In this document: positions 7,776-45,885 of the stretch, one piece after another | How positions within the stretch are numbered: the first letter of the stretch is position 1 | Layout of the letters: every line of letters starts with the position of its first letter | Assembly (NCBI GenBank): GCA_002269645.1 | Contig: NIVC01000963.1 | Coordinates: 1-64,000 of the forward strand | Length of the DNA stretch: 64,000 nucleotides | Direction of reading: 5' to 3' | Source of the DNA: Macrostomum lignano | Lineage: Eukaryota | Notes under the pieces: model-generated | Databases searched by the model: none | The model's input: the letters and a program-made list of their open reading frames with translations, nothing else | Told to the model about the DNA's origin: nothing | Position numbers and translations under genes: made by a program

Positions 7776-7786
7776 AGTCCACTCAC

Positions 7787-8162: not shown

Positions 8163-8221
8163 CTGCCAGGGTGATTGAGAACATGCGGGAGGGGGTTGAG
8201 ACCATGGCAACAGAGGGGACT

Positions 8222-9215
8222 GCAGCGCCTTGATGACACGATGGGATCTCACAGCGCCTTGACAACACGATGGGGATCTCACAGCGCCTTGACAACACGA
8301 TGGGGATCTCACAGCGCCTTGACAACACGATGGGGATCTCACAGCACCTTGACAACACGATGGGGATCTCACAGCACCTTGACAACACGATGGGGATCTC
8401 ACAGCACCTTGACGACACGATGGGGATCTCACAGCGCCTTGACAACACGATGGGATCTCACAGCGCCTTGACAACACGATGGGATCTCACAGCGCCTTGA
8501 CAACACGATGGGGATCTTACAGCACCTTGACAACACGATGGGGATCTCACAGCACCTTGACGACACGATGGGGATCTCACAGCGCCTTGACAACACGATG
8601 GGATCTCACAGCGCCTTGACAACACGATGGGGATCTCACAGCGCCTTGACAACACGATGGGGATCTCACAGCGCCTTGACAACACGATGGGGATCTCACA
8701 GCACATTGCAAACACGATGGGGATCTCACAGCACCTTGACAACACGATGGGGTTCTCACAGCACCTTTACGACACGATGGGGATCTCACAGCGCCTTGAC
8801 AACACGATGGGGATCTCACAGCACCTTGACAACACGATGGGGATCTCACAGCACCTTGACAACACGATGGGGATCTCACAGCACCTTGACAACACGATGG
8901 GGATCTCACAGCACCTTGACAACACGATGGGGATCTCACAGCACCTTGACAACACGATGGGGATCTCACAGCACCTTGACAACACGATGGGGATCTCACA
9001 GCACCTTGACAACACGATGGGGATCTCACAGCACCTTGACAACACGATGGGGATCTCACAGCACCTTGACAACACGATGGGGATCTCACAGCACCTTGAC
9101 AACACGATGGGGATCTCACAGCACCTTGACAACACGATGGGGATCTCACAGCACCTTGACAACACGATGGGGATCTCACAGCACCTTGACAACACGATGG
9201 GGATCTCACAGCGCC
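8222..9215. repeat. 30-bp minisatellite GCACCTTGACAACACGATGGGGATCTCACA, ~33 copies (intronic)
   Basis: Near-identical tandem units. Confidence 0.95.
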
Positions 9216-9229
9216 CAGACGCTCCTCAC

Positions 9230-9410
9230 CAATCGGGGAGTCCTCTTTATCCAGCCAGGTCCTGAGGCTCTTGCAGTACATGCAGGACGGAGGACAGCCC
9301 AGCAGCTCGGGATCCGAGCGGACGGCCTTGCGCAGCTCTAGGCCGATGTCGATTCGCTGCAGCCTGGAGTAGGTCTGCTCGGGGGAGGACATTCGTGCCA
9401 ATCTGAGGTA
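9230..9410 (-). CDS. ANO: Anoctamin exon (phase 0-1)
   Basis: ttctag acceptor, gtgagg donor; 181 nt open; phases fit both neighbours. Confidence 0.65.
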
Positions 9411-9660
9411 CTAGAATTATGACTACAGGATGGCCAAATATTTTTTGTTTTTGCTTTTCTAAATTCTTAGAAAACAGTTAAAGAACTGCCCCTCTCGGGG
9501 TAACATTAAGTGATCTTTACTTTGAGCACTGCTGGTTCGTAACTGCATGATCCAGCCGCTTCATCATAAGTTTGTTAAACTCTGCTAAACTAGTTATTCA
9601 TATTTGCCATCAGGCATCCTCAATCTCCTACAAGTTCGGTTCCAACTCGCCCAGCCTCAC

Positions 9661-9767
9661 CAGGTAGATTCGCTGAGCTCCGGTGAGGCGAAACTCGCTG
9701 CCGTCGCGGCCGCCGCCGAAGAACATGTGCTTCTTCTTGAAGATGAACGGCGCACAGATGAAGTCCG
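9661..9767 (-). CDS. ANO: Anoctamin N-terminal exon
   Basis: DFICAPFIFKKKHMFFGGGRDGSEFRLTGAQRIYL resembles the anoctamin FTAPF...F...QR motif; gtgagg donor. Acceptor at 9768-9770 (alternative at 9788-9790). Confidence 0.75.
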
Positions 9768-9799
9768 CTGCGGGATTGGAGGGCCTTCTAATGTTAGAG

Positions 9800-10515
9800 C
9801 GGTGAGATAGACAGGGTGCGCATGTGTTAGACAGGTGTTAGACAGGGTGCGCATGTGTTAGGTAGGTGTTAGACAGGGTGCGCATGTGTTAGACAGGTGT
9901 TAGACAGGGTGCGCATGTGTTAGGTAGGTGTTAGACAGGGTGCGCATGTGTTAGACAGGTGTTAGACAGGGTGCGCATGTGTTAGACAGGTGTTAGACAG
10001 GGTGCGCATGTGTTAGACAGGTGTTAGACAGGGTGCCCATGTGTTAGGTAGGTGTTAGACAGGGTGCACATGTGTTAGACAGGTGTTAGACAGGGCGCGC
10101 ATGTGTTAGACAGGGTGTGCATGTATTAGACAGGGCGCGCATGTATTAGACAGGGTGTGCATGTATTAGACAGGGTGTACATGTATTAGACAGGGTGTAC
10201 ATGTATTAGACAGGGTGTACATGTATTAGACAGGGTGTACATGTATTAGATAGGGTGTACATGAATTAGACAGGGTGTACATGAATTAGACAGGGTGTAC
10301 ATGTATTAGATAGGGTGTACATGTATTAGACAGGGTGTACATGTATTAGACAGGGTGTACATGTATTAGACAGGGTGTACATGTATTAGACAGGGTGTAC
10401 ATGTATTAGACAGGGTGTACATATGTTAGACAGGGTGTGCATGTATTAGACAGGGTGTACATGTATGTAGACAGGGTGTACATGTATTAGACAGGGTGTA
10501 CATGTATTAGACAGG
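9800..10515. repeat. 20/30-bp minisatellite AGACAGGGTG(C/T)(G/A)CATGT(G/A)TT (intronic)
   Basis: Tandem units with a gradual sequence shift along the array. Confidence 0.95.
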
Positions 10516-10538
10516 GTGTTGCATTCTCCCCAGCCCAC

Positions 10539-10673
10539 CATTCTCGTCGGTGATTGCGGCTTCTTCCGCCTCCCGATGGCGGTGGTCTCGGGCTGCAGGC
10601 AGCCGCAGCAGCAGGGGTTGTCCCCCTCAATCTTGGCTTCGTCGTCCGGACAGCACAGCGGGGTGGTTTCGGT
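10539..10673 (-). CDS. ANO: Anoctamin exon (probable 1-nt indel)
   Basis: cag/gtgggc boundaries. TETTPLCCPDDE... needs one extra base (e.g. in the CCC run) to join in phase as ...EAAITDEN-ADFICAPF. Confidence 0.5.
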
Positions 10674-10763
10674 CTGAGAGGGTTCACGAAGTCGGCTGTG
10701 AGGCAGCGGCAACGGATTTTTCAAGATCAGATATGGTCAAAGCTCAAGTTATTGTTCTGAGAT

Positions 10764-12347
10764 CAGAGAATAGATATGAGAACTGATCAAATGTCAGAGA
10801 ATAGATATGAGAACTGATCAAATGTCAGAGAATAGATATGAGAACTGCTCAAATGTCAGAGAATAGATGTGAGAACAGCTCAAATGTCAGAGAATAGATA
10901 TGAGAACTGATCAAATGTCAGAGAATAGATGAGAACAACTCGAATGTCAGAGAATAGATATGAGAACTGCTCAAATGTCAGAGAATAGATATGAGAACAG
11001 CTCAAATGTCAGAGAATAGATATGAGAACAACTCAAACGTCAGAGAATAGATTAGAACAGCTCTGAGACCAAAGAATAGATGAGAACAACTCGAATGTCA
11101 GAGAATAGATATGAGAACAGCTCAAATGTCAGAGAATAGATATGAGAACAGCTCAAATGTCAGAGAATAGATGAGAACAACTCAAACGTCAGAGAATAGA
11201 TATGAGAACAGCTCAAATGTCAGAGAATAGATATGAGAACAGCTCAAATTTCAGAGAATAGATATGAGAACTGCTCGAATGTCAGAGAATAGATATGAGA
11301 ACTGCTCAAATGTCAGAGAATAGATATGAGAACTGCTCAAATGTCAGAGAATAGATATGAGAACAGCTCAAATGTCAAAGAATAGATATGAGAACAGCTC
11401 AAATGTCAGAGAATAGATATGAGAACTGATCAAATGTCAGAGAATAGATATGAGAACTGCTCAAATGTCAGAGAATAGATATGAGAACTGCTCAAATGTC
11501 AGAGAATAGATATGAGAACAGCTCAAATGTCAAAGAATAGATATGAGAACAGCTCAAATGTCAGAGAATAGATATGAGAACTGATCAAATGTCAGAGAAT
11601 AGATATGAGAACTGCTCAAATGTCAGAGAATAGATATGAGAACAGCTCAAATGTCAGAGAATAGATATGAGAACAACTCAAATGTCAGAGAATAGATATG
11701 AGAACTGATCAAATGTCAGAGAATAGATATGAGAACAGCTCAAATGTCAGAGAATAGATATGAGAACAACTCAAATGTCAGAGAATAGATATGAGAACTG
11801 ATCAAATGTCAGAGAATAGATATGAGAACAACTCAAACGTCAGAGAATAGATTAGAACAGCTCTGAGACCAAAGAATAGATGAGAACAACTCAAATGTCA
11901 GAGAATAGATATGAGAACTGATCAAATGTCAGAGAATAGATGAGAACAACTCAAACGTCAGAGAATAGATTAGAACAGCTCAGAGACAAAGATTAGATGA
12001 GAACAACTCAAATGTCAGAGAATAGATATGAGAACTGATCAAATGTCAGAGAATAGATATGAGAACAGCTCAAATGTCAAAGAATAGATATGAGAACAGC
12101 TCAAATGTCAGAGAATAGATATGAGAACTGCTCAAATGTCAGAGAATAGATATGAGAACTGCTCAAATGTGAGAGAATAGATATGAGAACAGCTCAAATG
12201 TCAAAGAATAGATATGAGAACAGCTCAAATGTCAGAGAATAGATATGAGAACAACTCAAATGTCAGAGAATAGATATGAGAACTGCTCAAATGTCAGAGA
12301 ATAGATGAGAACAGCTCAGAGACCAAAGAATAGATGAGAACAGCTCA
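10764..12347. repeat. 31-bp minisatellite CAGAGAATAGATATGAGAACTGCTCAAATGT, ~50 copies (intronic)
   Basis: Period 31 checked directly. Confidence 0.95.
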
Positions 12348-12365
12348 GCAGTCAATCAGCCTCAC

Positions 12366-12675
12366 CGCCTTCAGCGGCATCTCCATCTTCACAAACTCAG
12401 CCTCGTGCAGCAGAACGTCAACATCCTTGGCGCGGAAGCCCCAGTAGGTGGACTGGTAGGGCGCCCACTTCTTCCGCTTCGGCGTGTCCTTGGCAACGGG
12501 CAGCTGCAGCTTGAGCTTGTCGATCTGCAGGTCCATTTTGCGGGCGGCGGCCCAGTACAGCTGCCTGGCCGCCACCTTCAGGCGGCACTGCAGCTGGTTG
12601 TCCTCCGGGAACGAGTGGATCTGCGCGTAAAACAGCACGTAGTCAGCGGCCAGCAGCTCCTGCGGGACCTCCATC
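12366..12675 (-). CDS. ANO: Anoctamin N-terminal (dimerisation domain) exon
   Basis: ADYVLFY and DVLLHEAEFVKMEMPLK match anoctamin DYVLVY and WEVL..EAE.LK.KMP motifs; cag/gtgagg boundaries. Confidence 0.8.
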
Positions 12676-13011
12676 CTGACAGGCTTGAGTTGCTGGAATT
12701 AGCGAGCTCTGCTCTGAGTGAGCAGTTAAAATAGCGCTGCCATCACCTGCAGCCCGCTAGCCTGCGTTATCGCTATTTGTGGCGGTCGTTGAGCTCTCAC
12801 GCCACCGCAGGAGAGGGGGGCTGCACTGTTGCCGAGGCGACAAGTGTACAGACCTGAGCGCCTGTCTCTCTTCATCGGAGTCTGTGCGGGCTTGAAATAC
12901 AGCTTTTTTCGTATAGCAGGGCTTCTGTTATGCCCAGTGCTGAGAGGGTACTTGGAGAACTGAGTTTGGGCAGAGGAGAGTTGAATGCCAGTGGCATTCG
13001 TGCTGCGTTTG

Positions 13012-13571
13012 CGAGCTCTACAGTATGAGATGGGTGAGATCTGCGAGCTCTACAGTATGAGATGGGTGAGATCTGCGAGCTCTTCAGTATGAGATGGGTG
13101 GGATCTGCGAGCTCTTTAGTATGAGATGGGTGGGATCTGCGAGCTCTTCAGTATGAGATGGGTGAGATCTGCGAGCTCTACAGTATGAGATGGGTGAGAT
13201 CTGCGAGCTCTACAGTATGAGATGGGTGAGATCTGCGAGCTCTTCAGTATGAGATGGGTGAGATCTGCGAGCTCTACAGTATGACAGGAGTGAGAGTGAC
13301 GGCAGACAGGAGTGAGAGTGACGGCAGACAGGAGTGAGAGTGACGGCAGACAGGAGTGAGAGTGACGGCAGACAGGAGTGAGAGTGACGGCAGACAGGAG
13401 TGAGAGTGACGGCAGACAGGAGTGAGAGTAACGGCAGACAGGAGTGAGAGTGACGGCAGACAGGAGTGAGAGTAACGGCAGACAGGAGTGAGAGTGACGG
13501 CAGACAGGAGTGAGAGTGACGGCAGACAGGAGTGAGAGTGACAGCAGACAAGAGTAAGAGTGACAGCAGAC
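13012..13571. repeat. Adjacent 32-bp and 22-bp minisatellites
   Basis: GAGCTCTACAGTATGAGATGGGTGAGATCTGC x~8, then GACAGGAGTGAGAGTGACGGCA x~13. Confidence 0.95.
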
Positions 13572-13797: not shown

Positions 13798-13911
13798 TGA
13801 GACAGACAGTCAGGCAGACAGACAGACAGACACACAGACAGACAGACAGACAGACAGGCACTAAGACAGGCAGAGAGACAGGCAGGCAGACAGGCAGACA
13901 GGCAGGCAGGC

Positions 13912-14614: not shown

Positions 14615-15310
14615 CAACTGAGACAGGGGTGAGACAGTGAGAGACGGGTGACACAGTGAGAGACAGGGGTGAGACAGTGAGAGACAGGGGTGAGACAGTG
14701 AGAGACTGGGGTGAGACAGTGAGAGACAGGGATGAGACAGTAAGAAACAGGGGTGAGACAGTGAGAGACAGGGGTGAGACAGTGAGAGACAGGGGTGACA
14801 GTGAGAAGCACGGGTGAGACAGTGAGAGACAGGGGTGAGACAGTGAGAGACAGGGGTGAGACAGTGAGAAGCACGGGTGAGACAGTGAGAGACAGGGGTG
14901 AGACAGTGAGAGACAGGGGTGAGACAGTGAGAAGCACGGGTGAGACAGTGAGAGACAGGGGTGAGACAGTGAGAAACAGGGATGAGACAGTGAGAGACAG
15001 GGGTGAGACAGTGAGAGACAGGGGTGAGACAGTGAGAAGCACGGGTGAGACAGTGAGAGACAGGGGTGAGACAGTGAGAAAAGGGGGTGAGACAGTGAGA
15101 AAAGGGGGTGAGACAGTGAGAAAAGGGGGTGAGACAGTGAGAAAAGGGGGTGAGACAGTGAGACAGGGGTGAGACAGTGAGAAAAGGGGGTGAGACAGTG
15201 AGAGAAGGGGGTGAGACAGTGAGACAGGGGTGAGACAGTGAGAAAAGGGGGTGAGACAGTGAGACAGGGGTGAGACAACAAACACAGGGGTGAGACAACA
15301 AACACAGGGG
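14615..15310. repeat. 21-bp minisatellite GAGACAGGGGTGAGACAGTGA, ~32 copies
   Basis: Period 21 checked directly. Confidence 0.95.
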
Positions 15311-15374: not shown

Positions 15375-15530
15375 TTAGCAGGGGTTCTCATCTTGGTCCG
15401 CTTCCTCCGTGTCCGGGTTCACCTCGTGGGCGGTCAGCTTGGATCGCTGCAGTGGAGGCGGGTTACAATACAGGTTCAAGTGCGACGTTGGTGAGATGGC
15501 AGCTTGAGCACGCAGATCTGTACGCTCGAA
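15375..15530 (-). CDS. Possible terminal (cytoplasmic tail) exon of the LDLR-family gene
   Basis: Unique sequence downstream of the TM exon. Candidate acceptors do not fit the donor phase cleanly; no canonical NPxY. Confidence 0.3.
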   Translation of the reverse strand, partial: FERTDLRAQAAISPTSHLNLYCNPPPLQRSKLTAHEVNPDTEEADQDENPC

Positions 15531-15574
15531 AACTGGATACAGGACCCACAACTCGAAATCCTGAATCGTCAGCC

Positions 15575-15765
15575 TGAAACCCCAAATTCCCAGCCAGAGA
15601 TAACAAATCCCCAGCCTGAAATCACAAATCCCCAGTTTGAAATCCCGAATTCCCAGCCTGAAATCCCAAATCCCCAACCTGAAATCCCAAATCCCCAACC
15701 TGATGTCCCAAATCCCCAGTCTGAAATCCCAAATCCCCAACTTGAAATCCCAGGTCCCCAGCCTC
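15575..15765. repeat. 21-bp minisatellite CAGCCTGAAATCCCAAATCCC, starting at the splice donor
   Basis: About 9 copies immediately after gtgagg. Confidence 0.9.
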
Positions 15766-15767
15766 AC

Positions 15768-16357
15768 CGAGTTGATCTTGGGCAGGCCGGTGGCCTCAGT
15801 GGAGCGGTTCAATCGCCGGTGCCGCCTCAGGCATGCAGCAGCGAGCGCGGCGCCGGCGGCCAGGCACAGCAGGAGGCCCGACACGGCCACCGCGGCAGCT
15901 ACGAGGCTTTGCTGTTGCCCGGCCGCCGCATCGGAGCCGTCCTGAGCAGCTCCGGTGGACTCGGCCGCGACCGGCTCCGGCTGCTTCCGGCCGGGCTTAC
16001 GGCCAGCATCGCCGCTCGGCACGCAGACTCCGTCCTTCATCACGCTGAGCTGGTCGCACAAGCAGACGGGGCTGCCGCCAGCCTGGATGCAGATGTGACC
16101 ACCGCAGGTGCACCGCCTGCTGCCCGCCTGACCTCCCAGCGCCTGCCGCACCGAGTGGTACACCACTGCCGACAGCACCGAGCCGCTGTGCTCCGGCGGC
16201 AGCACCAGCTTCAGCGGCTGGCCCGCGAATTTGTCGATGGAGTAAACGGCGCCGGCGCGCAGGTCGCTCCAGAGCAGGCGGTCCTCGAACTGCGCCAGGC
16301 CCAGCGGGATGCCGTCGTAGCCGCTGCCCATGTGCCAGATGGCCCGCCTGTCCGAGC
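15768..16357 (-). CDS. LDLR-family exon 5: last YWTD repeats, EGF-C, transmembrane helix
   Basis: LLWSD repeat, CTCGGHICIQ...CLCD...GVC EGF, TM LVAAAVAVSGLLLCLAAGAALAAAC followed by RRHRR; 590 nt, phase 1-0. Confidence 0.85.
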
Positions 16358-16362
16358 CTGCG

Positions 16363-16862
16363 GGCGGGGTTTATGGCTGTGGATTGGGGTTTATGGCTGT
16401 GGATTGGGGTTTATGGCTGTGGATTGGGGTTTATGGCTGTGGATTGGGGTTTATGGCTGTGGATTGGGTTTTATGGCTGTGGATTGGGGTTTATGGCTGT
16501 GGCATGGGGTTTATGGCTGTGGATTGGGGTATATGGCTGTGGATTGGGGTTTATGGCTGTGGATTGGGGTTTATGGCTGTGGATTGGGGTTTATGACTGT
16601 GGATTGAGGTTTATGGCTGTGGATTGGGGTATATGGCTGTGGATTGGGGTTTATGGCTGTGGATTGGGGTATATGGCTGTGGATTGGGGTTTATGGCTGT
16701 GGATTGGGGTTTATGGCTGTGGATTGGGGTTTATGGCTGTGGCATGGGGTTTATGGCTGTGGATTGGGGTATATGGCTGTGGATTGGGGTTTATGGCTGT
16801 GGATTGGGGTATATGGCTGTGGATTGGGGTTTATGGCTGTGGATTGGGGTTTATGGCTGCGG
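16363..16862 (-). repeat. 20-bp minisatellite CCATAAACCCCAATCCACAG (sense), ~25 copies, resembling the adjacent splice acceptor
   Basis: The real acceptor reads CCATAAACCCCGCCCGCAG. Confidence 0.9.
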
Positions 16863-16987
16863 ATTGCAGGGTTCATGGCTACGGGGTGGGGTTTAAAGCA
16901 AAAGGGAGAGGGGGTTTGTCCAGGGATTTATGTCCCGGGGTTTCAGACCCTGCGCCAGGCGCGCTGGATTGGAAGCCCCTAACAAAC

Positions 16988-17510
16988 CGTTGAGCCTGGC
17001 GGAGAAGACGCCCCTCAGCTCCATGTCCAGCCAGTACAGCCGGCCCTGCTCGCTGTCCAGCGCCAGGTGTCCGGGCGCGCCCCGGCCGCCAGTCAGCAGC
17101 GGGCGCAGCTCGGAGCCGTCCATGCGCAGGGTGTACAGGCCGGGCCGGGCGCCGCACCACAGGCTGATGTACAGAAGGCCCCTGGCCGGGTCCGCAGCCA
17201 GGCCCCTTGGGCAGGTGAGCCTGGCCAGCCAGGTGTACCGGCCGTGGTCCACGTTGAGCACCCCGACGCCGCCGCTGTTGTTGCGGGCGTCGGCGGCGTC
17301 GGGCACCAGGTAGAACAGCAGGCCGCGGGTCCAGTCGTAGGCGATGGCGTCCAGCACGGCGTCGCGCATGAGGATTTCGGCCGGGGCTGCCGGGCGGTCC
17401 AGCCGCAGGCGGCCCACCTGACCGTCGCGGGTGTGGAAGAACACGAGCCGCCTGCTGGAGTCGAAGTCCAGGAACTTCACCAGCTTCAGCTCGGAGCCGC
17501 CGTCAGTCAG
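16988..17510 (-). CDS. LDLR-family exon 4: YWTD beta-propeller
   Basis: AIAYDWTRGLLFYL, PRGLAADPARGLLYISL, GHLALDSEQGRLYWLD; 523 nt, phase 0-1. Confidence 0.9.
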
Positions 17511-17614
17511 CTGCAATGTCGGAGCGAATTACTTTCAGCACTCACCGCTGGCTTAGCAGGGCTGGGAATATCACAAATCTCACTGTTATGCCGCATCTCA
17601 TCTCATCTTACGTC

Positions 17615-19040
17615 ACCCTATCTCACCGAATCCCCCCTATCTCCCCCTATCTCACCGAATCCCCCCAAATTCCCCTATCTCACCGAATCCCCCCTATCTC
17701 CCCCTATCTCACCGAATCCCCCCAAATTCCCCTATCTCACCGAATCCCCCCAAATTCCCCTATCTCACCGAATCCCCCCAAATTCCCCTATCTCACCGAA
17801 TCCCTCCAAATTCCCCTATCTCACCGAATCCCCCCAAATTCCCCTATCTCACCGAATCCCCCTATCTCACCGAATCCCCCTATCTCACCGAATCCCCCCA
17901 TCTCACCGAATCCCCCTATCTCACCGAATCTCCCTATCTCACCGAATCTCCCCTATCTCACCGAATCTCCCCTATCTCACCGAATCCCCCTATCTCACCG
18001 AATCCCCCTATCTCACCGAATCCCCCTATCTCACCGAATCCCCCTATCTCACCGAATCCCCCTATCTCACCGAATCCCCCTATCTCACCGAATCTCCCCT
18101 ATCTCACCGAATCTCCCCTATCTCACCGAATCCCCCCTATCTCCCCCTATCTCAACCTATCTCACCGAATCCCCCTATCTCACCGAATCCCCCTATCTCA
18201 CCGAATCCCCCTATCTCACCGAATCTCCCCTATCTCACCGAATCTCCCCTATCTCACCGAATCCCCCCTATCTCCCCCTATCTCAACCTATCTCACCGAA
18301 TCCCCCTATCTCACCGAATCTCCCCTATCTCACCGAATCCCCCTATCTCACCGAATCCCCCTATCTCACCGAATCCCCCTATCTCACCGAATCCCCCTAT
18401 CTCACCGAATCCCCCTATCTCACCGAATCCCCCTATCTCACCGAATCTCCCCTATCTCACCGAATCTCCCCTATCTCACCGAATCCCCCTATCTCCCCCT
18501 ATCTCAACCTATCTCACCGAATCCCCCTATCTCACCGAATCCCCCTATCTCACCGAATCCCCCTATCTCACCGAATCCCCCTATCTCACCGAATCCCCCT
18601 ATCTCACCGAATCTCCCCTATCTCACCGAATCTCCCCTATCTCACCGAATCCCCCCTATCTCCCCCTATCTCAACCTATCTCACCGAATCCCCCTATCTC
18701 ACCGAATCCCCCTATCTCACCGAATCCCCCTATCTCACCGAATCTCCCCTATCTCACCGAATCCCCCTATCTCACCGAATCCCCTCTATCTCCCCCTATC
18801 TCAACCTATCTCACCGAATCCCCCTATCTCACCGAATCCCCCTATCTCACCGAATCCCCCTATCTCACCGAATCCCCCTATCTCACCGAATCCCCCTATC
18901 TCACCGAATCTCCCCTATCTCACCGAATCCCCCTATCTCACCAAATCCCCTCTATCTCACCAAATCCCCTCTATCTCACCGAATCCCCCTATCTCACCGA
19001 ATCTCCCCTATCTCCTCCTCATAGAATCTCCCCCTATCTC
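17615..19040. repeat. 18-20-bp minisatellite CTATCTCACCGAATCCCC (intronic)
   Basis: Tandem units. Confidence 0.95.
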
Positions 19041-19659
19041 ACCCCTGAGCTAGCCGAATCTCACCTAATCTCACTTATAGACATACCCATAGATCTTATT
19101 CTTACATCCCATATGAGCTTTGACACCAAAGCCTCCCTTTAAGCCATGGCTTAACCTTCACTCTCCCTGTAATGCTTGGCCTACCAACAACTCCCAATTG
19201 GCCTCTTGGCATTTCAGCAAACCCATATAAGCCTTGAACTCTCAGCAACCCCCCCACGAGCAGTTGCATATTCCTGCTCCTAAGTAGCAATATAAGAATT
19301 TCGCCATATAAAATTGCAAGCTATTTAAAGCTGCAGTGACCAGCTCACAATTTCTGGGACTGCTCAATGCCAGTTTGAGCAACAGAGAAAATTTTGGAGA
19401 GCCGTTAGACAATAAAAAACAAGAATTTTTTAAAGCAGAGAAAAGTTGGCATCTTAGATAAGGCCAGAAGCAGTACACAAGACGGGTCAGGAGAGAGGGT
19501 GAGCCAGACAGAATTGTCACGAGAATGCGAAACTGATGTCGGATGCAGAGCTCTACAGACACTGTAGGTTGAGACTCGCTCAGGTACTAACATATCAGAT
19601 GGCTGACATGGGGTGAAGTAGGGTGAGCTGCAGTGAGATAAGCTTCAGGAGACAATGGT

Positions 19660-20680
19660 GCGAAATGAGTGAGATGGGGTGAGACAGGGTGAGGTGGGTG
19701 AGACAGGGTGAGATGAGATGACATGAGGTGAGACAGGGTGAGATGAGATGACATGAGGTGAGACAGGGTGAGATGAGATGACATGAGGTGAGACAGGGTG
19801 AGATGAGATGACATGAGGTGAGACAGGGTGAAATGAGATGACATGAGGTGAGACAGGGTGAGATGAGATGACATGAGGTGAGACAGGGTGAAATGAGATG
19901 ACATGAGGTGAGACAGGGTGAGGTAAGGTGAGACAGGGTGAGATAAGATGACATGAGGTGAGACAGGGTGAAATGAGATGACATGAGGTGAGACAGGGTG
20001 AGGTAAGGTGAGACAGGAAGAGATGAGATGACATAAGGTGAGACAGGGTGAGACAGGGTGAGATGAGGTGACATGAGGTAAGACAGGGTCAGATGAGGTG
20101 AGACAGGGTCAGTTGAGGTAAGACAGGGTCAGATGAGTTGAGACAGGGTTAGATGAGGTGAGACAGGGTCAGATGAGGTGAGACAGGGTCAGTTGAGGTA
20201 AGACAGGGTCAGATGAGGTGAGACAGGGTCAGATGAGGTGAGACAGGGTCAGATGAGGTGAGACAGGGTCAGTTGAGGTAAGACAGGGTCAGATGAGGTG
20301 AGACAGGGTCAGATTAGGTGAGACAGGGTCAGATGAGGTGAGACAGGGTCAGTTGAGGTAAGACAGGGTCAGATGAGGTGAGACAGGGTCAGATGAGGTG
20401 AGACAGGGTCAGATGAGGTGAGACAGGGTCAGTTGAGGTAAGACAGGGTCAGATGAGGTGAGACAGGGTCAGATTAGGAGACAGGGTCAGATGAGGTGAG
20501 ACAGGGTCAGATGAGGTGAGACAGGGTCAGATGAGGTGAGACAGGGTGAGATAGGGTCAGATGAGGTAAGATGAGGTGAGACAGGGTGAGAGGTGAGACA
20601 GGATGAGATGGGGTGAGATAGGGTGAGACAGGATGATATGGGGTGAGATAGGGTGAGACAGGATGAGATGGGGTGAGACT
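19660..20680. repeat. Minisatellite of 10-bp modules GAGACAGGGT/GAGATGAGGT (30- and 20-bp periods; intronic)
   Basis: Tandem units. Confidence 0.95.
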
Positions 20681-20688
20681 AGGCTCAC

Positions 20689-21117
20689 TTTGGTGACGGC
20701 CTTCGTGTCGGAGTCGAGCAGCCTCACGCCAGCCTGGGTGGAGTAGAGCAGCTTGGGGGCTCCCACAGCCCTGCAGCGGCGGCCGTCCTTGCCATCGGGC
20801 AGGTAGCCGGGCAGGCAGGAGCAGGCCGGGCCTGTCGGGGTGCTCCGGCAGCGGTGGTCGCAGGTGCCGAACTCCTCGGTGCACTCGTCAGCCACCTGGC
20901 AGGCGCCCGCAACGGAGCGGCGGCCCGGGGGCAGCCAGCCGAGTCTGGCAGGGCGGAAGCCGATGGGTCCGGCAGGGCGGTGGGCGCGGGCGCTGTGGCG
21001 CAGCCCCGCTCGTCGCTGCCGTCTGGGCAGTGCAGGAGGCCGTCGCAGCGCTGCTTCACTGGGATGCAGTGCTGCCCGTTCTTGCAGGTCCAGTAGGAGT
21101 CCGTGGCGCAGAGCACT
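20689..21117 (-). CDS. LDLR-family exon 3: LDLa repeat + EGF-A/EGF-B (contains a frameshift)
   Basis: CATDSYWTCKNGQHC...CDGLLHCPDGSDERGC, then after a frame change ADECTEEFGTCDHRCRSTPTGPACSCLPGY...RC. Confidence 0.8.
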
Positions 21118-21164
21118 CTGCGATTGGGATTGGGGAAATCACCTGTGCGACATCGCCTGAGGCA

Positions 21165-24100
21165 GACACCTACCTGTCTATGGGGCAGACACTCACCTGT
21201 CTATGGAACCGACACTCACCTGTCTATAAGGCAGACACTCACCTGTCTATGGGGCAGACACTCACCTGTCTATGGGGCAGAAACTCACCTGTCTATGGGG
21301 CAGAAACTCACCTGTCTATGGAGCAGAAACTCACCTGTCTATGAGGCAGAAACTCACCTGTCTATGGAGCAGACACTAATCTGTCTATGGGGCAGAAACT
21401 CACCTGTCTATGGGGCAGAAACTCACCTGTCTATGGAGCAGAAACTCACCTGTCTATAGGGCAGAAACTCACCTGTCTATGGGGCAGAAACTCACCTGTC
21501 TATGGAGCAGACACTCATCTGTCTATGGGGCAGACACTCACCTGTCTATGGAGCAGACACTCATCTGTCTATGGGGCAGACACTCATCTGTCTATGGGGC
21601 AGACACTCATCTGTCTATGGGGCAGACACTCACCTGTCTATGAAGCAGACACTCATCTGTCTATGGGGCAGAAACTCATCTGTCTATGGGGCAGAAACTC
21701 ACCTGTTTATGGGGCAGAAACTCACCTGTCTATGGAGCAGACACTCATCTGTCTATGGGGCAGACACTCATCTGTCTATGGAGCAGACACTCACCTATCT
21801 ATGGGGCAGACACTCACCTGTCTATGGGGCAGACACTCACCTGTCTATGGGGCAGACACTCATCTGTCTATGGGGCAGAAACTCATCTGTCTATGGAGCA
21901 GACACTCATCTGTCTATGGGGCAGACACTCACCTATCTATGGGGCAGAAACTCACCTGTCTATGTGGCAGACACTCACCTATCTATGGGGCAGACACTCA
22001 CCTGTCTATGAGGCAGACACTCACCTGTCTATGGGGCAGAAACTCACCTGTCTATGGGGCAGACACTCACCTGTCTATGGAGCAGACACTCATCTGTCTA
22101 TGGGGCAGACACTTATCTGTCTATGGGGCAGAAACTCATCTGTCTATGGAGCAGACACTCATCTGTCTATGGGGCAGACACTCACCTGTCTATGGGGCAG
22201 ACACTCATCTGTCTATGGGGCAGAAACTCATCTGTCTATGGAGCAGACACTCATCTGTCTATGGGGCAGACACTCACCTATCTATGGGGCAGACACTTAT
22301 CTGTCTATGGGGCAGAAACTCATCTGTCTATGGGGCAGACACTCACCTGTCTATGGGACAGACACTCACCTTATCTATGGGGCAGACACTCACCTGTCTA
22401 TGAGGCAGACACTCACCTGTCTATGGGGCAGAAACTCACCTGTCTATGGGGCAGAAACTCACCTGTCTATGGAGCAGACACTCATCTGTCTATGGGGCAG
22501 ACACTTATCTGTCTATGGGGCAGAAACTCATCTGTCTATGGAGCAGACACTCATCTGTCTATGGGGCAGACACTCACCTGTCTATGGGGCATACACTCAT
22601 CTGTCTATGGGGCAGAAACTCATCTGTCTATGGAGCAGACACTCATCTGTCTATGGGGCAGACACTCACCTATCTATGGGGCAGACACTTATCTGTCTAT
22701 GGGGCAGAAACTCATCTGTCTATGGGGCAGACACTCACCTGTCTATGGGACAGACACTCACCTATCTATGGGGCAGACACTCACCTGTCTATGAGGCAGA
22801 CACTCACCTGTCTATGGGGCAGACACTCATCTGTCTATGGGGCAGAAACTCATCTGTCTATGGAGCAGACACTCATCTGTCTATGGGGCAGACACTCACC
22901 TATCTATGGGGCAGAAACTCACCTGTCTATGGAGCAGACACTCACCTATCTATGGGGCAGACACTCACCTGTCTATGAGGCAGACACTCACCTGTCTATG
23001 GGGCAGACACTCATCTGTCTATGGGGCAGAAACTCATCTGTCTATGGAGCAGACACTCATCTGTCTATGGGGCAGACACTCACCTATCTATGGGGCAGAA
23101 ACTCACCTGTCTATGTGGCAGACACTCACCTATCTATGGGGCAGAAACTCACCTGTCTATGAGGCAGACACTCACCTGTCTATGGGGCAGAAACTCATCT
23201 GTCTATGGGGCAGAAACTCACCTGTCTATGGAGCAGACACTCATCTGTCTATGGGGCAGACACTTATCTGTCTATGGGGCAGAAACTCATCTGTCTATGG
23301 AGCAGACACTCATCTGTCTATGGGGCAGACACTCACCTATCTATGGGGCATACACTCATCTGTCTATGGGGCAGAAACTCATCTGTCTATGGGGCAGAAA
23401 CTCATCTGTCTATGGAGCAGACACTCATCTGTCTATGGGGCAGACACTCACCTATCTATGGGGCAGAAACTCACCTGTCTATGTGGCAGACACTCACCTA
23501 TCTATGGGGCAGACACTCACCTGTCTATGGGGCAGACACTCACCTGTCTATGGGGCAGAAACTCACCTGTCTATGGGACAGAAACTCACCTGTCTATGGA
23601 GCAGACACTCATCTGTCTATGGGGCAGACACTCACCTATCTATGGGGCAGACACTCACCTATCTATGGGGCAGAAACTCACCTGTCTATGTGGCAGACAC
23701 TCACCTATCTATGGGGCAGACACTCACCTGTCTATGAGGCAGACACTCACCTGTCTATGGGGCAGACACTCATCTGTTTATGGGGCAGAAACTCATCTGT
23801 CTATGGAGCAGACACTCATCTGTCTATGGGGCAGACACTCACCTATCTATGGGGCAGAAACTCACCTGTCTATGTGGCAGACACTCACCTATCTATGTGG
23901 CAGACACTCACCTGTCTATGGGGCAGACACTCATCTGTCTATGGGGCAGAAACTCACCTGTCTATGGGGCAGAAACTCACCTGTCTATGGAGCAGACACT
24001 CATCTGTCTATGGGGCAGACACTCACCTATCTATGGGGCATACACTCATCTGTCTATGGGGCAGAAACTCATCTGTCTATGGGGCAGACACTCACCTATC

Positions 24101-24411
24101 TATGGGGCAGAAACTCACCTGTCTATGTGGCAGACACTCACCTATCTATGGGGCAGACACTCACCTGTCTATGAGGCAGACACTCACCTGTCTATGGGGC
24201 AGACACTCATCTGTCTATGGGGCAGACACTCATCTGTCTATGGGGCAGAAACTCACCTGTCTATGGGGCAGAAACTCACCTGTCTATGGAGCAGACACTC
24301 ATCTGTCTATGTGGCAGACACTCACCTATCTATGGGGCAGAAACTAACCTGTCTATGTGGCAGACACTCACCTATCTATGGGGCAGACACTCACCTGTCT
24401 ATGGGGCAGAC
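21165..24411 (-). repeat. 23-bp minisatellite GTCTGCCCCATAGACAG|GTGAGT, ~140 copies, equal to the exon 2 / intron junction
   Basis: Unit = last 17 coding nt plus first 6 intron nt. Confidence 0.95.
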
Positions 24412-24827
24412 CTCGTCCTCGCCGTGCAGGCACTCGCTGATGCCATCGCAGACAAAGTTGATGGGCACGCAGGCGGGGTCCCGCGGCCCCTTGCCGGTGG
24501 AGAACCTGCAGGAGAACTCGTAGCTGAAGCCGCAGTTACCGCGGCCGGGACAGCCGATCTCGTCCTGGCCGGAGCTGCAGTCGATGGTGCCGTCACAGCG
24601 CACGCTGGCTTTGAGGCAGCGCCCGTCGCAGTGGAACTCGCAGTCGGCCGCGGCTGCCCGGCAAATGTCCGGCGACTCGTCCGAGCCGTCAAAGCAGTCC
24701 TTGAAGCCGTCGCAGACGAAGCTGCGGGTGACGCAGGACTTGCCGTCCAGGCAGCGGAACTGGTCGGGGCCGCAGGCTCCGCGGGCCACGGCCCCGGGCG
24801 CGGGGCAGTCCATCTCGTCTGAGTAGT
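24395..24827 (-). CDS. LDLR-family exon 2: LDLa repeats
   Basis: Three class A repeats (CDGFKDCFDGSDE, CDGTIDCSSGQDE, CDGISECLHGEDE); 433 nt, phase 1-2, matching exon 3. Confidence 0.9.
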
Positions 24828-24974
24828 CTGCCAGGCCTGGGCGGGATGGAGAGGCGAAGCAGCGGGGTTGAAGAAAGGGATTTCTGAGGACCGGAGTCTG
24901 GGCGGGCATCAGGGCGGGAGTCGGGACAGAGGAGCGTCAGGGCGTGTATGATATGGGGGAATCGAGAGGGGAAC

Positions 24975-25560
24975 AGGGATCAGGGATCAGGGAGGAGATC
25001 AGGGAGGGGAATAGGGAGGGGATCAGGGAGGGGAATAGGGAGGGGATCAGGGAGGGGAATAGGGAGGGGATCAGGGAGGGGAATAGGGAGGGGATCAGGG
25101 AGGGGAATAGGGAGGGGATCAGGGAGGGGAATAGGGAGGGGATCAGGGAGGGGAATAGGGAGGGGATCAGGGAGGGGAATAGGGAGGGGATCAGGGAGGG
25201 GAATAGGGAGGGGATCAGGGAGGGGAATAGGGAGGGGATCAGGGAGGGGAATAGGGAGGGGATCAGGGAGGGGAATAGGGAGGGGATCAGGGAGGGGAAT
25301 AGGGAGGGGATCAGGGAGGGGAATAGGGAGGGGATCAGGGAGGGGAATAGGGAGGGGATCAGGGAGGGGAATAGGGAGGGATCAGGGAGGGGAATAGGGA
25401 GGGGATCAGGGAGGGGAATAGGGAGGGGATCAGGGAGGGGAATAGGGAGGGGATCAGGGAGGGGAATAGGGAGGGGATCAGGGAGGGGAATAGGGAGGGG
25501 ATCAGGGAGGGGAATAGGGAGGGGATCAGGGAGGGGAATAGGGAGGGGATCAGGGAGGGG
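24975..25560. repeat. 24-bp minisatellite GGGAGGGGAATAGGGAGGGGATCA, ~24 copies (intron 1)
   Basis: Near-perfect tandem units. Confidence 0.95.
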
Positions 25561-25591
25561 ATTAGCAAGGGGATCACTGGCATCAGCTCAC

Positions 25592-25934
25592 CAGTTCTCT
25601 CGCAGTCGAAGCTGCCATCGCAGCGCATGGTGGCGGGTAGGCAGTGGCCGGGGCTCTGGGCGCAGGCGAACTGTCCGTGGGCGCAGCGCCGCCGCTTGCA
25701 CAGCTCCAGGGACTCGTCGGCCGCGTCAGGGCAGTGTGGCCGGCCATCGCAGACGAGGTGGTCGGCGATGCAGCGCAGAGGCTGGCTGAGGCTGGAGCTG
25801 TTCCGCAGGGGGCAGGAGAACTGGCCGGGCTCCGGGCAAGTCAGCGTGGCAGCGGAGGCTGCGGATTTTCCGACGTCGGCGGCAGCTGCAATGTACAACA
25901 GCAGGGCGATGAAGCTCAGCTGCTTGCCTGGCAT
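25592..25934 (-). CDS. LDLR-family exon 1: signal peptide + LDLa repeats
   Basis: MPGKQLSFIALLLYIAAAA signal peptide, CDGRPHCPDAADE; gtgagc donor; splices to DYSDEMDC. Confidence 0.9.
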
Positions 25935-27429: not shown

Positions 27430-27845
27430 GAGATAGCTGGCCCCAGCATCCTGTCTGAGCTGATGATGCCAGGTAGCTGGCCCCAGCATCCTGTCTGAGC
27501 TGATGATGCCAGGTAGCTGGCCCCAGCATCCTGTCTGAGCTGATGATGCCAGGTAGCTGGCCCCAGCATCCTGACTGAGCTGATGATGCCAGGTAGCTGG
27601 CCCCAGCATCCTGTCTGAGCTGATGATGCCAGGTAGCTGGCCCCAGCATCCTGTGTGAGCTGATGATGCCAGGTAGCTGGCCCCGGCATCCTGTGTGAGC
27701 TGATGATGCCAGGTAGCTGGCCCCAGCATCCTGTCTGAGCTGATGATGCCAGGTAGCTGGCCCCAGCATCCTGTCTGAGCTGATGATGCCAGGTAGCTGG
27801 CCCCAGCATCGCATCCTGTCTGAGCTGATGATGCCAAGTAGCTGG
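27430..27845. repeat. 40-bp minisatellite, ~10 copies
   Basis: GATGCCAGGTAGCTGGCCCCAGCATCCTGTCTGAGCTGAT; period 40 checked. Confidence 0.95.
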
Positions 27846-28122
27846 CAAGGTGAAGGGAGAAGGGGAGAGAAGGGGAGATGAAAGGAGAAAGAGGGAAAGC
27901 TGAGGAGATACGAGTATAAAAAGCTGGAGATGAAGAGGCAAGATTTGGAGAGACGGAGATGGAGGATTGAAGAGAGACAGTGTGACCCTTAGCCCCGCTG
28001 TAAGCGCATTCGAAATGCCACGTGACTAAAATCTAGCTTAAACAAGCAATAATTAGTTTGCAACCCACTGCCATAGCCAGGCCAGCGCAGGCAACCTACA
28101 AACAAATTCGCGAATAACCTAC

Positions 28123-42579: not shown

Positions 42580-45885
<3,306 letters not shown>

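What the first reader, a model, noticed from the sequence alone, without database searches (positions are those of the whole stretch)
21165..24411. 3.2-kb minisatellite whose unit is the exon/intron junction (amplified splice donor)
Seen: the sense unit GTCTGCCCCATAGACAG|GTGAGT is the last 17 coding nt (VCPIDR) plus the donor. Phase 2 at the first copy matches exon 3. About 140 copies fill ~99% of the 3277-nt intron; many keep GT and many are mutated to AT. Using any later copy reads through an in-frame TGA. Inference: the intron grew by tandem amplification of its own 5' splice site, leaving dozens of decoy U1 sites that must be ignored or used for recursive splicing/NMD regulation.
Basis: seen in the sequence. 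Interest (0 to 1): 0.8.

Follow-up and report, generated by a model that had tools for sequence, protein, structure and literature searches.

The report
Splice-donor minisatellite filling a flatworm intron
An intron of an LDL-receptor-like gene of the flatworm Macrostomum lignano is almost wholly made of 141 tandem copies of the 23 bases that span the exon end and splice donor, an unusually large example of a repeat type already described in human and amphioxus genes.

Summary
A 23-bp array of 141 copies lies at 21168-24411 on the minus strand. Its first copy is the last 17 nt of exon 2 plus the donor GTGAGT. It fills 98.8% of a 3277-nt intron. 85 units keep GT and 56 carry AT. Using any later donor reads into an in-frame TGA.

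The host is an LDL-receptor-like gene of Macrostomum lignano, a repeat-rich hidden polyploid. Tandem arrays make up 34% of the window and 86% of this gene's intron bases. All five introns are inflated by arrays that start or end within a few bases of splice sites. Intron 3 carries another 64 sense-strand pseudo-donors. Only this array crosses into an exon.

The best reading is a neutral tandem duplication of the exon/donor junction, expanded in blocks, with the most upstream donor used. This class is already described: the human F7 IVS7, IFI6, CBS, LMNB2 and PDGFA minisatellites, and the amphioxus "mirages". The case here is a new and extreme member, with 59 perfect CAG|GTGAGT sites counting the authentic one.

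No transcript data were reachable, so donor choice is inferred. The assembled copy also carries a 1-nt frameshift in exon 3, so it may be a decaying duplicate.

The parts
24395..24836 (-). Exon 2 of an LDL-receptor-like gene. It encodes the end of LDLa module 2 and modules 3-5. Its last 17 nt (24411-24395, GTCTGCCCCATAGACAG = V C P I D R[2/3]) are the first 17 nt of repeat unit 1.
   Evidence: Stop-free frame 24394-24936. The translation matches Macrostomum lignano UniRef proteins P0001 and P0002 over most of its length. Six Pfam Ldl_recept_a stretches are found in the spliced product. Gene model.
24389..24394 (-). Inferred authentic 5' splice site GTGAGT, in the context CAG|GTGAGT. It forms the last 6 nt of unit 1. 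The donor phase is 2.
   Evidence: It is the only donor whose phase matches exon 3. Read-through gives AGG TGA. Its use in vivo is inferred; no transcript data were available.
21168..24411 (-). Minisatellite of 141 units of 23 bp (one unit is 24 bp, at 22387), consensus GTCTGCCCCATAGACAGGTGAGT. Counting the authentic site in unit 1, 59 units are CAG|GTGAGT and 23 are TAG|GTGAGT. 56 units have the donor G+1 changed to A. There are 29 sequence variants, arranged in recurring multi-unit blocks.
   Evidence: TRF. In-register lists. Variant counts, column composition and unit-identity peaks at lags 8, 17, 25 and 33. GT and AT units are clustered: 49 runs against 68 +/- 5.7 in shuffles.
21158..21167 (-). 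Terminal partial unit GTCTGCCTCA. Its last base, together with the next base (AG at 21158-21157), makes an in-frame alternative acceptor that would add 13 codons (RCRTGDFPNPNRR).
   Evidence: Sequence; frame worked out from the model. Disfavoured because it would add an unpaired Cys to the linker between modules.
21118..21157 (-). The only non-repeat part of the intron (40 nt): GGCGATGTCGCACAGGTGATTTCCCCAATCCCAATCGCAG. It holds a degenerate donor-like CACAG|GTGATT, a pyrimidine-rich tract and the acceptor AG (21119-21118).
20689..21117 (-). Exon 3: LDLa module 6, a Pro/Ala linker and an EGF-like module. As assembled it contains a 1-nt frameshift between the LDLa frame and the EGF frame, around 20893-20990.
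   Evidence: Three-frame translation, and a CDS length of 2399 = 3n+2. Pfam finds Ldl_recept_a, and FXa_inhibition (EGF-like) below its curated cut-off (25.4 vs 33.4 bits).
15375..25934 (-). The whole host gene. Six exons: 25934-25592, 24836-24395, 21117-20689, 17510-16988, 16357-15768 and 15446-15375. Domains: signal peptide, 6 LDLa modules, EGF, YWTD propeller, EGF, transmembrane segment, short tail. Introns are 755, 3277, 3178, 630 and 321 nt, of which 82, 98.8, 76, 84 and 65% are tandem arrays.

Best explanation
This is a junction-spanning minisatellite of the "mirage" or F7-IVS7 type.

Origin (inferred). A 23-bp segment made of the last 17 coding bases of exon 2 and the GTGAGT donor was duplicated in tandem, probably by replication slippage. 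It sat in a gene whose intron 2 was originally about 46 nt long. The array then grew to 141 copies by slippage and unequal exchange of multi-unit blocks. The same process has inflated every other intron of this gene in the tandem-repeat-rich genome of Macrostomum lignano.

Consequence (inferred). The most upstream copy is still the one that splices, so every added copy is removed as intron and the coding sequence is unchanged. The array is therefore a neutral or slightly deleterious passenger. The other 84 GT-bearing copies, 58 of them identical to the authentic CAG|GTGAGT site, are pseudo-donors. If one is used, the transcript meets a TGA one codon after the normal junction. Such products would be unproductive, not protein variants.

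Shown from sequence: the anatomy, the reading phase, the stop codon, the block structure and the genomic context.

Inferred: the direction of derivation (exon to array), the use of the first donor, and neutrality.
For: - The array and its register with the exon end are confirmed.
- The exon copy equals the majority consensus at all 23 columns.
- The unit is confined to this locus within the window.
- The spliced frame is continuous only from the first donor, and the intron is 3277 nt with 40 non-array nt.
- The 17 exonic nt encode V-C-P-I-D-R. The Cys lies where the sixth cysteine of LDLa module 5 is expected, and relatives aligned show DE-x-x-C-P there.
- Block-wise growth is indicated by recurring variant strings (JHAGB, HAGBCID, MAKDAGB), identity peaks at lags of about 8, 17, 25 and 33 units, and clustering of GT and AT units.
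- Genomic context: 33 arrays make up 34% of the window, and 86% of this gene's intron bases are arrays lying within 3-15 nt of four of the five donors.
- M. lignano has 15% simple and tandem repeats (PMC5730564). Its mean intron is about twice as long as in two congeners (PMC10468722).
- Precedent for upstream-donor choice: in human F7 IVS7 the first 37-bp monomer spans the exon 7 junction and only the most upstream of 5-9 identical donors is used. Similar arrays exist in IFI6, CBS, LMNB2 and PDGFA (PMC1557585).
- Amphioxus "mirage" repeats that span exon-intron boundaries do not disturb splicing (PMC3087553).
- Intron 3 of the same gene holds 64 sense-strand TTCG|GTGAGAT motifs, as good as three of the gene's authentic donors. 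Ignoring tandem pseudo-donors must therefore be routine in this organism.
Against: - No RNA evidence could be reached. Exact-sequence look-ups for the locus found nothing, and the available UniRef models stop at or garble the junction.
- The Cys in the unit lies one residue after DE, not two to four. The Pfam LDLa match stops at ...GEDE and scores the same with or without the tail. The argument that the exon tail is ancestral is therefore suggestive, not decisive.
- The F7 study found that perfect-consensus pseudo-sites can draw splicing towards themselves. Here 58 decoys are perfect.
- In a species with short introns, pairing across the intron could favour the donor nearest the acceptor.
- The assembled gene has a 1-nt frameshift in exon 3, so this copy may not be under selection at all.
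Confidence: 0.75

Rival explanations
1. Decaying duplicate. This copy of the gene is a recently inactivated homeologue in a hidden polyploid. The array is unconstrained junk, and splicing of intron 2 may already be inefficient or wrong. The origin by junction duplication is unchanged under this reading. Only the claim that the first donor still works and the gene is functional is dropped.
For: - The CDS as assembled is 2399 nt (3n+2), with a frame switch inside the exon 3 linker. No GT...AG pair there could remove it.
- The array shows only one length error in 141 units and no error in 141 C4 runs, so a random assembly indel is not especially likely.
- M. lignano underwent a recent whole-genome duplication (PMC10468722), and its assembly holds 180 Mb of duplicated blocks that are at least 95% identical (PMC5730564).
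Against: - All other exon frames, about 2.3 kb in total, are open and give good LDLa, EGF and YWTD matches.
- The shift lies near C5/G3 homopolymers in a very GC-rich linker, a typical place for a consensus error.
Confidence: 0.2
2. Functional array. The repeats act in RNA processing. One possibility is a chain of recursive splice sites: each unit is a pyrimidine stretch followed by AG|GTGAGT, so splicing from any donor to any later unit's ACAG regenerates the same junction. Other possibilities are a U1-binding platform, or a source of regulated unproductive splicing with NMD that tunes receptor output.
For: - 82 units have AG|GTRAGT preceded by TCTGCCCC.
- Any unit-to-unit splice would restore an intact unit, by construction.
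- Every mis-choice of donor gives an immediate stop.
Against: - The pyrimidine stretch is only 8 nt. It is separated from the AG by the purine-rich ATAGAC, which contains a competing AG 4 nt upstream. Using that AG would insert 4 nt.
- There is no good branch-site motif in the unit.
- The RNA is less structured than shuffled controls (z = +3.4).
- 40% of units carry a dead donor, spread in blocks, as expected from drift.
- The other four introns are filled by unrelated arrays without such sites, so no function needs to be invoked.
- At 3.3 kb the intron is far shorter than introns known to need recursion (general knowledge).
Confidence: 0.08
3. Reverse direction. A generic intronic minisatellite came first, and the exon acquired its present last 17 nt and donor from a repeat unit, through deletion or unequal exchange that fused ...GAGGACGAG to a unit.
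For: - The unit shares 7-10-mers (AGACAGG, TAGACAGGTG) with 7 other arrays of the window, against 1.3 expected (p about 0.006).
- The Cys spacing DE-V-C is atypical, and the Pfam match does not use it.
Against: - Those related arrays lie on the opposite strand.
- The full unit occurs nowhere else in 64 kb.
- The scenario needs a repeat unit to supply, by luck, a cysteine at nearly the right place, the right phase and a working linker.
- The exon copy equals the array consensus, as expected of a founder held constant by selection.
- C-P after the last cysteine is also seen in the aligned relatives.
Confidence: 0.06
4. Assembly artefact. The array is real but its length, or its abutment to the exon, is a mis-assembly.
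For: None from the sequence itself. Repeat-rich M. lignano assemblies are known to be difficult (PMC5730564). One amphioxus mirage was reported as mis-assembled in a draft genome (PMC3087553).
Against: - There are 29 unit variants in an ordered, non-random, block-wise pattern, with clean 23-nt periodicity and unique flanks on both sides.
- An independent UniRef model from an earlier M. lignano annotation also ends exon 2 with ...EDEVCPID (P0001).
Confidence: 0.04

Closest known systems
Human F7 intron 7 minisatellite (37-bp VNTR whose first monomer spans the exon 7/IVS7 boundary; Borensztajn et al. 2006, PMC1557585)
   Same: The first monomer contains the exon end and the donor, so the authentic 5' splice site is followed by identical pseudo-sites. 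Use of most later sites gives a premature stop. It is the model for selection of the most upstream donor.
   Different: - F7 has 5-9 copies of 37 bp, with only 4 exonic nt and a weak donor (UGG|gugggu).
- Here there are 141 copies of 23 bp, 17 exonic nt and a perfect-consensus donor.
- F7 splicing has been tested experimentally; here nothing has.
- The host is a flatworm, not a mammal.
Human IFI6 (6-16) intron 2, CBS IVS13, LMNB2 and PDGFA intron 4 minisatellites, as listed in PMC1557585. [quoted passage not shown]
   Same: Junction-spanning arrays that reiterate the donor: 25 pseudo-sites in IFI6, and 10-20 repeats in the others.
   Different: - In IFI6 and CBS the two nearest pseudo-sites are also used.
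- Here any such use hits a TGA at once.
- The copy number here is about 5-10 times higher.
Amphioxus 'mirage' minisatellites (Adh3; globins BflGb6 and BflGb9; Canestro et al. 2002 as cited in, and Ebner et al. 2010 as read from, PMC3087553)
   Same: [quoted passage not shown] Many units keep AG/GT signals, regular splicing is not disturbed, and the arrays are unstable in length. They occur in a genome where the phenomenon seems general.
   Different: - Mirage units are 10-160 bp with a few to some tens of copies.
- Both donor-side and acceptor-side cases are known.
- Polymorphism and splicing were shown experimentally there; here neither could be tested.
Recursive splice sites (ratchet points) of long Drosophila and vertebrate introns (from general knowledge, not from a tool result)
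   Same: An acceptor and a donor lie side by side (YAG|GTRAGT), so the 5' splice site is regenerated after each step.
   Different: - Known sites are single, conserved elements in introns of tens to hundreds of kb, with long pyrimidine tracts.
- Here there are 82 tandem copies in 3.3 kb, with a poor tract and a competing AG.
- There is no evidence that they are used.
Intron gain by tandem duplication of an AGGT-containing exon segment (Rogers model, discussed in PMC3087553)
   Same: Tandem duplication creates extra GT and AG signals without changing the mRNA. The head of exon 3 resembles the unit weakly (15 of 19 nt with one gap).
   Different: - The unit carries an in-frame TGA, so it cannot be former exon sequence.
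- The intron sits at the usual position between two LDLa modules and is probably old.
- What happened here is intron expansion, not gain.

Membership tests
Junction-spanning ('mirage' / F7-IVS7-type) minisatellite | Head-to-tail array of units of roughly 10-100 bp | tested here: met
   Period 23, 141.3 copies, 91% matches. 140 matches with up to 3 mismatches against 0 in shuffles.
Junction-spanning ('mirage' / F7-IVS7-type) minisatellite | The first monomer contains the exon-intron boundary, so the authentic splice-site sequence is reiterated in the intron | tested here: met
   Unit 1 (24411-24389) is 17 exonic nt plus GTGAGT. The exon is defined by the open frame, identity to M. lignano proteins, and phase continuity with exon 3. 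Counting the authentic site, 59 units have the identical CAG|GTGAGT.
Junction-spanning ('mirage' / F7-IVS7-type) minisatellite | Normal splicing uses the authentic (most upstream) site, and pseudo-sites stay silent or nearly so | not testable with these tools
   No transcript data were reachable. The only support is reading-frame logic: later donors give AGG TGA.
Junction-spanning ('mirage' / F7-IVS7-type) minisatellite | Copy number varies between alleles (VNTR behaviour) | not testable with these tools
   Only one haplotype is in the window. The block-wise variant pattern shows past unequal exchange but not present polymorphism.
Recursive splice sites | 3' and 5' splice-site consensus side by side (AG|GTRAGT) | tested here: met
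   82 intronic matches to AGGTRAGT on the sense strand.
Recursive splice sites | A functional pyrimidine tract and branch site upstream of the AG, with no competing AG | tested here: inconclusive
   There is only TCTGCCCC (8 nt), followed by ATAGAC, which has an AG 4 nt upstream of the candidate AG. No YNYURAY-like motif was seen in the unit (read from the sequence).
Recursive splice sites | Intermediate lariats or junctions are observed; the sites lie in very long introns | not testable with these tools
   No RNA data. The intron is 3277 nt, short by the standard of known cases.
Intron created by tandem duplication of exon sequence (Rogers model) | The unit is former coding sequence, so it must be open in the gene's frame, and the sequence after the acceptor repeats the sequence after the donor | tested here: not met
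   There is an in-frame TGA in the unit right after the donor. The exon 3 head matches the unit only at 15 of 19 nt with one gap, which is the top 0.4% of CDS windows (p about 0.01-0.02).
LDL-receptor family (host gene) | LDLa modules, an EGF-like module, YWTD class B repeats, and one transmembrane segment | tested here: met
   Pfam Ldl_recept_a, 6 stretches, E = 1.6e-38; Ldl_recept_b, E = 1.1e-9. The EGF-like match (FXa_inhibition) is below its curated cut-off at 25.4 vs 33.4 bits. A hydrophobic stretch LVAAAVAVSGLLLCLAAGAALAAAC is present. As assembled, the frame is broken once in exon 3.

The most novel reading that the evidence does not exclude
Each unit is a pyrimidine stretch followed by AG|GTGAGT, the form of a recursive splice site. 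The array could therefore be a self-correcting chain. Any donor-to-later-unit splice deletes whole units and regenerates the same junction. The 3.3-kb intron would then be removed in arbitrary steps, and the 58 perfect decoys would help splicing instead of threatening it.

A wider version is that M. lignano tolerates, or even exploits, hundreds of tandem U1 sites per gene through an unusually strict first-site rule. That would make this locus a natural 141-site test of how a 5' splice site is chosen.
Probability: 0.08. Interest if true: 0.6.

Novelty: new member of a known kind. Interest (0 to 1): 0.3.

Why it matters
This array appears larger than every precedent found in the papers read here. 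It has 141 copies against 5-26, with 58 decoy donors identical to a perfect-consensus authentic site.

Macrostomum lignano can be made transgenic (PMC5730564). The locus could therefore serve as a natural substrate to test in vivo whether 5' splice sites are chosen by 5'-to-3' scanning, by proximity to the acceptor, or by strength. The F7 work raised that question for 5-9 weak sites.

The locus also illustrates how minisatellites have inflated this species' introns right up to the splice signals. That is relevant to gene annotation, because several UniRef models break at this junction, and to the doubling of mean intron length relative to two congeners.

It does not reveal a new mechanism or a new class of element.

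Tried and rejected
1. Hairpin hypothesis. The unit contains AGACA...TGTCT around the donor, but folding the exon end plus seven units gave a z-score of +3.4, less structured than every shuffle. Rejected.

2. Other copies of the locus. Exact-product look-ups for the exon-2 ORF and for P0001 found nothing. The protein search returned no ORF calls from M. lignano contigs. Haplotype, homeologue and orthologue comparison was therefore impossible.

3. It is phase 0 and incompatible with both in-frame acceptors, which need phase 2. It is a poor match to the donor consensus and would remove the module's last Cys. Rejected on sequence grounds only.

4. Selection against decoys as the cause of G-to-A at +1. 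Only this one knockout is frequent. T+2 is kept in 140 of 141 units, and the AT units occur in blocks. Drift plus block amplification is enough. Units 2-5 are all sub-optimal donors, but the chance of that is about 0.11.

5. The cysteine in the unit as proof that the exon tail is ancestral. Pfam does not extend to it, so it was downgraded to suggestive.

6. Other arrays of the window derived from donors. GTRAG-bearing units occur on both strands relative to the gene, so this is a matter of composition or a shared core, not of splice sites.

7. A short hidden intron to cure the exon 3 frameshift. The only GT...AG pair there is 18 nt apart and of the wrong length class.

8. Rfam scan of the window. 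No family was found.

9. Papers PMC117041 (Canestro 2002) and PMC306954 (IFI6 1995) are not held. They are cited only through papers that quote them.
Full report
**What is there**

Tandem Repeats Finder reports a single array at 21161-24411 with period 23, 141.3 copies, 91% matches, no indels and score 5149. On the minus strand the units run in register from 24411 down to 21168. There are 141 units, one of which is 24 nt long, and a 10-nt partial unit follows. A search for the unit with up to three mismatches finds 140 copies, all inside the array. No match occurred in any of 100 shuffles or anywhere else in the 64 kb.

**The gene around it**

The flanks encode LDL-receptor class A modules. 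A protein search with the spliced flanks returns three Macrostomum lignano UniRef entries as best hits. tblastn shows residue-for-residue identity to them over long stretches, including the signal peptide. The window is therefore from M. lignano or something nearly identical.

I built a six-exon model on the minus strand: 25934-25592, 24836-24395, 21117-20689, 17510-16988, 16357-15768 and 15446-15375. Pfam finds six Ldl_recept_a stretches, an EGF-like module (below its curated cut-off) and Ldl_recept_b repeats.

The first repeat unit, GTCTGCCCCATAGACAG|GTGAGT, is the last 17 nt of exon 2 (V C P I D and two bases of R) plus the donor. The intron is 24394-21118, which is 3277 nt. Of this, 3237 nt (98.8%) are array and only 40 nt are unique.

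The donor leaves phase 2, and with base 21117 it gives AGA. The frame then continues into the next module (...EDEVCPIDR-VLCATDSYWTC...). Reading past the first donor gives GAC AGG TGA.

It fits neither of the two in-frame acceptors (21118, or 21157 in the truncated last unit).

Every numerical statement in the finding checks out.

**Inside the array**

There are 29 unit variants. The column-by-column majority consensus is identical to the exonic first unit.

The donor hexamer is GTGAGT in 82 units, ATGAGT in 50 and ATAAGT in 5, plus four singletons. That gives 85 GT units and 56 AT units. 59 units are the perfect CAG|GTGAGT and 23 are TAG|GTGAGT.

Variants recur in strings such as JHAGB, HAGBCID, MAKDAGB and AGKAE. 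Unit identity peaks at lags of about 8, 17, 25 and 33 units. GT and AT units are clustered, with 49 runs against 68 +/- 5.7 expected.

This is the signature of growth by unequal exchange of multi-unit blocks. It explains the spread of the G-to-A change without invoking selection. The other donor positions are almost invariant; for example, T+2 is kept in 140 of 141 units.

The RNA is less structured than shuffled controls (z = +3.4), so the small AGACA/TGTCT stem around the donor means nothing.

The sense strand is closed by TAG and TGA in two of the three frames. The antisense strand has stop-free runs of up to 459 codons, purely because the unit lacks TTA, CTA and TCA.

**Context**

The array is not an isolated oddity.
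- 33 arrays cover 34% of the window.
- In this one gene, all five introns are 65-99% tandem array. Together that is 7008 of 8161 intron bases. The non-array remainders are 134, 40, 768, 100 and 111 nt.
- In introns 1, 3 and 5 the arrays begin 3-15 nt after the donor. In intron 4 the array ends 8 nt before the acceptor.
- Intron 3 contains 64 sense-strand copies of TTCG|GTGAGAT, as good as the authentic donors of introns 1, 3 and 5 (CTG|GTGAGC, AAA|GTGAGC, TCG|GTGAGG).

So tandem pseudo-donors inside introns are ordinary in this gene. What is special about intron 2 is only that the unit reaches 17 nt into the exon.

The published genome paper gives 15% simple and tandem repeats for M. lignano (PMC5730564). 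A later comparison gives a mean intron of 1114 nt, against 558 and 692 nt in two congeners, and describes the species as a hidden polyploid after a recent genome duplication (PMC10468722).

**Most likely history and mechanism**

A 23-bp segment spanning the exon end and donor of a very short intron (6 + 40 nt without the array) was duplicated in tandem and then expanded. As long as the first donor is used, all added copies are spliced out, so the change is neutral.

The exon-to-array direction is favoured for these reasons.
- The exon copy equals the consensus.
- The unit is local to this site.
- The exon part supplies a cysteine where the sixth cysteine of module 5 should be, followed by Pro, as in aligned relatives.

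This last argument is weaker than it looks. The spacing DE-V-C is one residue shorter than usual. The Pfam match stops at ...GEDE and scores the same with or without the tail.

Use of the first donor is an inference from the reading frame and from precedent.

**What is already known**

Borensztajn et al. 2006 (PMC1557585) describe the human F7 gene. There the first 37-bp monomer of a minisatellite spans the exon 7/intron 7 boundary, and the authentic donor is followed by 4-8 identical pseudo-sites. Only the most upstream site is used, which the authors explain by 5'-to-3' scanning.

They list further cases: IFI6/6-16 (25 pseudo-sites, with the two nearest also used), CBS, LMNB2 and PDGFA. They also found that pseudo-sites matching the consensus perfectly can pull splicing towards themselves. 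This is relevant here, because 58 decoys are perfect.

In amphioxus, tandem repeats spanning exon-intron boundaries were named "mirages". They do not disturb splicing and are unstable in length (PMC3087553, citing Canestro et al. 2002).

The present array meets the two structural criteria of this class. The two behavioural criteria, first-site use and length polymorphism, could not be tested. It is therefore a new member of a known kind. It is notable for its copy number, for the strength of its donor, and for lying in a flatworm that can be made transgenic.

**Rivals and caveats**

1. The assembled CDS is 2399 nt (3n+2). The LDLa frame and the EGF frame of exon 3 differ by one base somewhere in 20893-20990, and no intron can mend this. 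It is either a consensus error in a GC-rich linker with C5/G3 runs, or this copy is a freshly broken homeologue. The clean periodicity of the array argues that the assembly is accurate, so the second possibility deserves about 0.2.

2. A role in recursive splicing, NMD control or U1 binding cannot be excluded, but nothing supports it. The acceptor half of the unit is poor: a short pyrimidine tract and a competing AG 4 nt upstream.

3. The reverse direction, in which the exon captured a repeat unit, is unlikely. It is kept at about 0.06 because the unit shares the core AGACAGG/TAGACAGGTG with seven other arrays (p about 0.006), although these lie on the other strand.

4. There is no sign of an assembly artefact.

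**Unexplained**

The first 19 nt of exon 3, with the preceding G, resemble the unit: GAGTGCTCTGCGCCACGGAC against GAGTG-TCTGCCCCATAGAC. This places it in the top 0.4% of CDS windows, with roughly two independent loci in about 90. It may be chance similarity between two x-Cys-x-x-Asp codings, or a trace of an older duplication.

**Verdict**

I score interest at 0.3.

Noticed in passing
window 15375-25934 (minus strand): Every one of the five introns of the LDL-receptor-like gene is 65-99% tandem array, 86% of all intron bases. Without the arrays the introns would be 40-768 nt. Arrays start 3-15 nt after four of the five donors. Over the whole window, 33 arrays cover 34% of the bases.
   Followed up: yes
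window 17616-19014 (intron 3, minus strand): An 18-bp array carries 64 sense-strand copies of TTCG|GTGAGAT. These pseudo-donors are as good as the gene's authentic donors of introns 1, 3 and 5. Decoy donors in tandem are therefore not unique to intron 2.
   Followed up: partly
window 16358-16895 (intron 4, minus strand): A 20-bp array (AATCCACAGCCATAAACCCC) ends only 8 nt before the acceptor cccgcag|gc, and each unit carries a CCACAG pseudo-acceptor. The branch site and pyrimidine tract must lie inside the array. The real acceptor may be a diverged unit, which would make this a possible acceptor-side 'mirage'. The similarity is only about 6 of 10 nt.
   Followed up: partly
window about 20893-20990 (exon 3, minus strand): There is a one-base frameshift between the frame of LDLa module 6 and that of the EGF-like module; the CDS is 2399 nt. 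No usable GT...AG pair could remove it. It is either an assembly indel near C5/G3 runs or a recently broken gene copy in this polyploid.
   Followed up: partly
window 9808-10519, 13283-13571, 14620-15297, 19669-20679, 27434-27846: Seven other arrays share a 7-10-mer core (AGACAGG, TAGACAGGTG, AGGTGAG) with the 23-bp unit, against 1.3 expected from shuffles (p about 0.006). Most are on the opposite strand. (AGAC)n and (TGTC)n microsatellites lie at 13800 and 45333. This may be a common minisatellite core, or a compositional bias of this genome.
   Followed up: partly
window 21098-21118 (intron end and exon 3 head): GAGTGCTCTGCGCCACGGAC resembles the repeat unit GAGTG-TCTGCCCCATAGAC (15 of 19 nt with one gap), which is the top 0.4% of 25-nt windows of the CDS. 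At protein level, the exon 2 tail VCPID resembles the exon 3 head LCATD. The cause is unexplained.
   Followed up: partly
window 21156-21160: The truncated last unit, ending in GTCTGCCTCAG|G, forms an in-frame alternative acceptor. It would insert 13 residues (RCRTGDFPNPNRR), including an extra Cys.
   Followed up: partly
window 21345-24344 (plus strand): Stop-free stretches of up to 459 codons run antisense through the array as 23-residue periodic peptides, because the unit lacks TTA, CTA and TCA. This is a periodicity artefact that an ORF caller would report as genes.
   Followed up: yes
window 42582-45300: A 1008-bp segment is duplicated in tandem: 43580-43879 equals 44588-44887 at 100% identity, and identical ORFs lie at 44005 and 45013. 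Each copy carries a 15-bp GATGGGAGAGGGGCG array, and a 552-bp (TGTC)n tract follows.
   Followed up: partly
window about 7786-12700 (minus strand): A second gene: an exon near 7800-8000 matches anoctamin-6 and anoctamin-1 (E = 1.4e-8 against PDB chains). The stretch between 8223 and 15300, up to the 3' end of the LDL-receptor-like gene, is again packed with arrays; exon-intron boundaries of this gene were not mapped.
   Followed up: partly
window 55931-58065 (plus strand): A remnant of an LTR-type retroelement. It has gag, a zinc knuckle and an aspartyl protease, followed directly by integrase-core matches. No reverse transcriptase domain was detected between them.
   Followed up: partly
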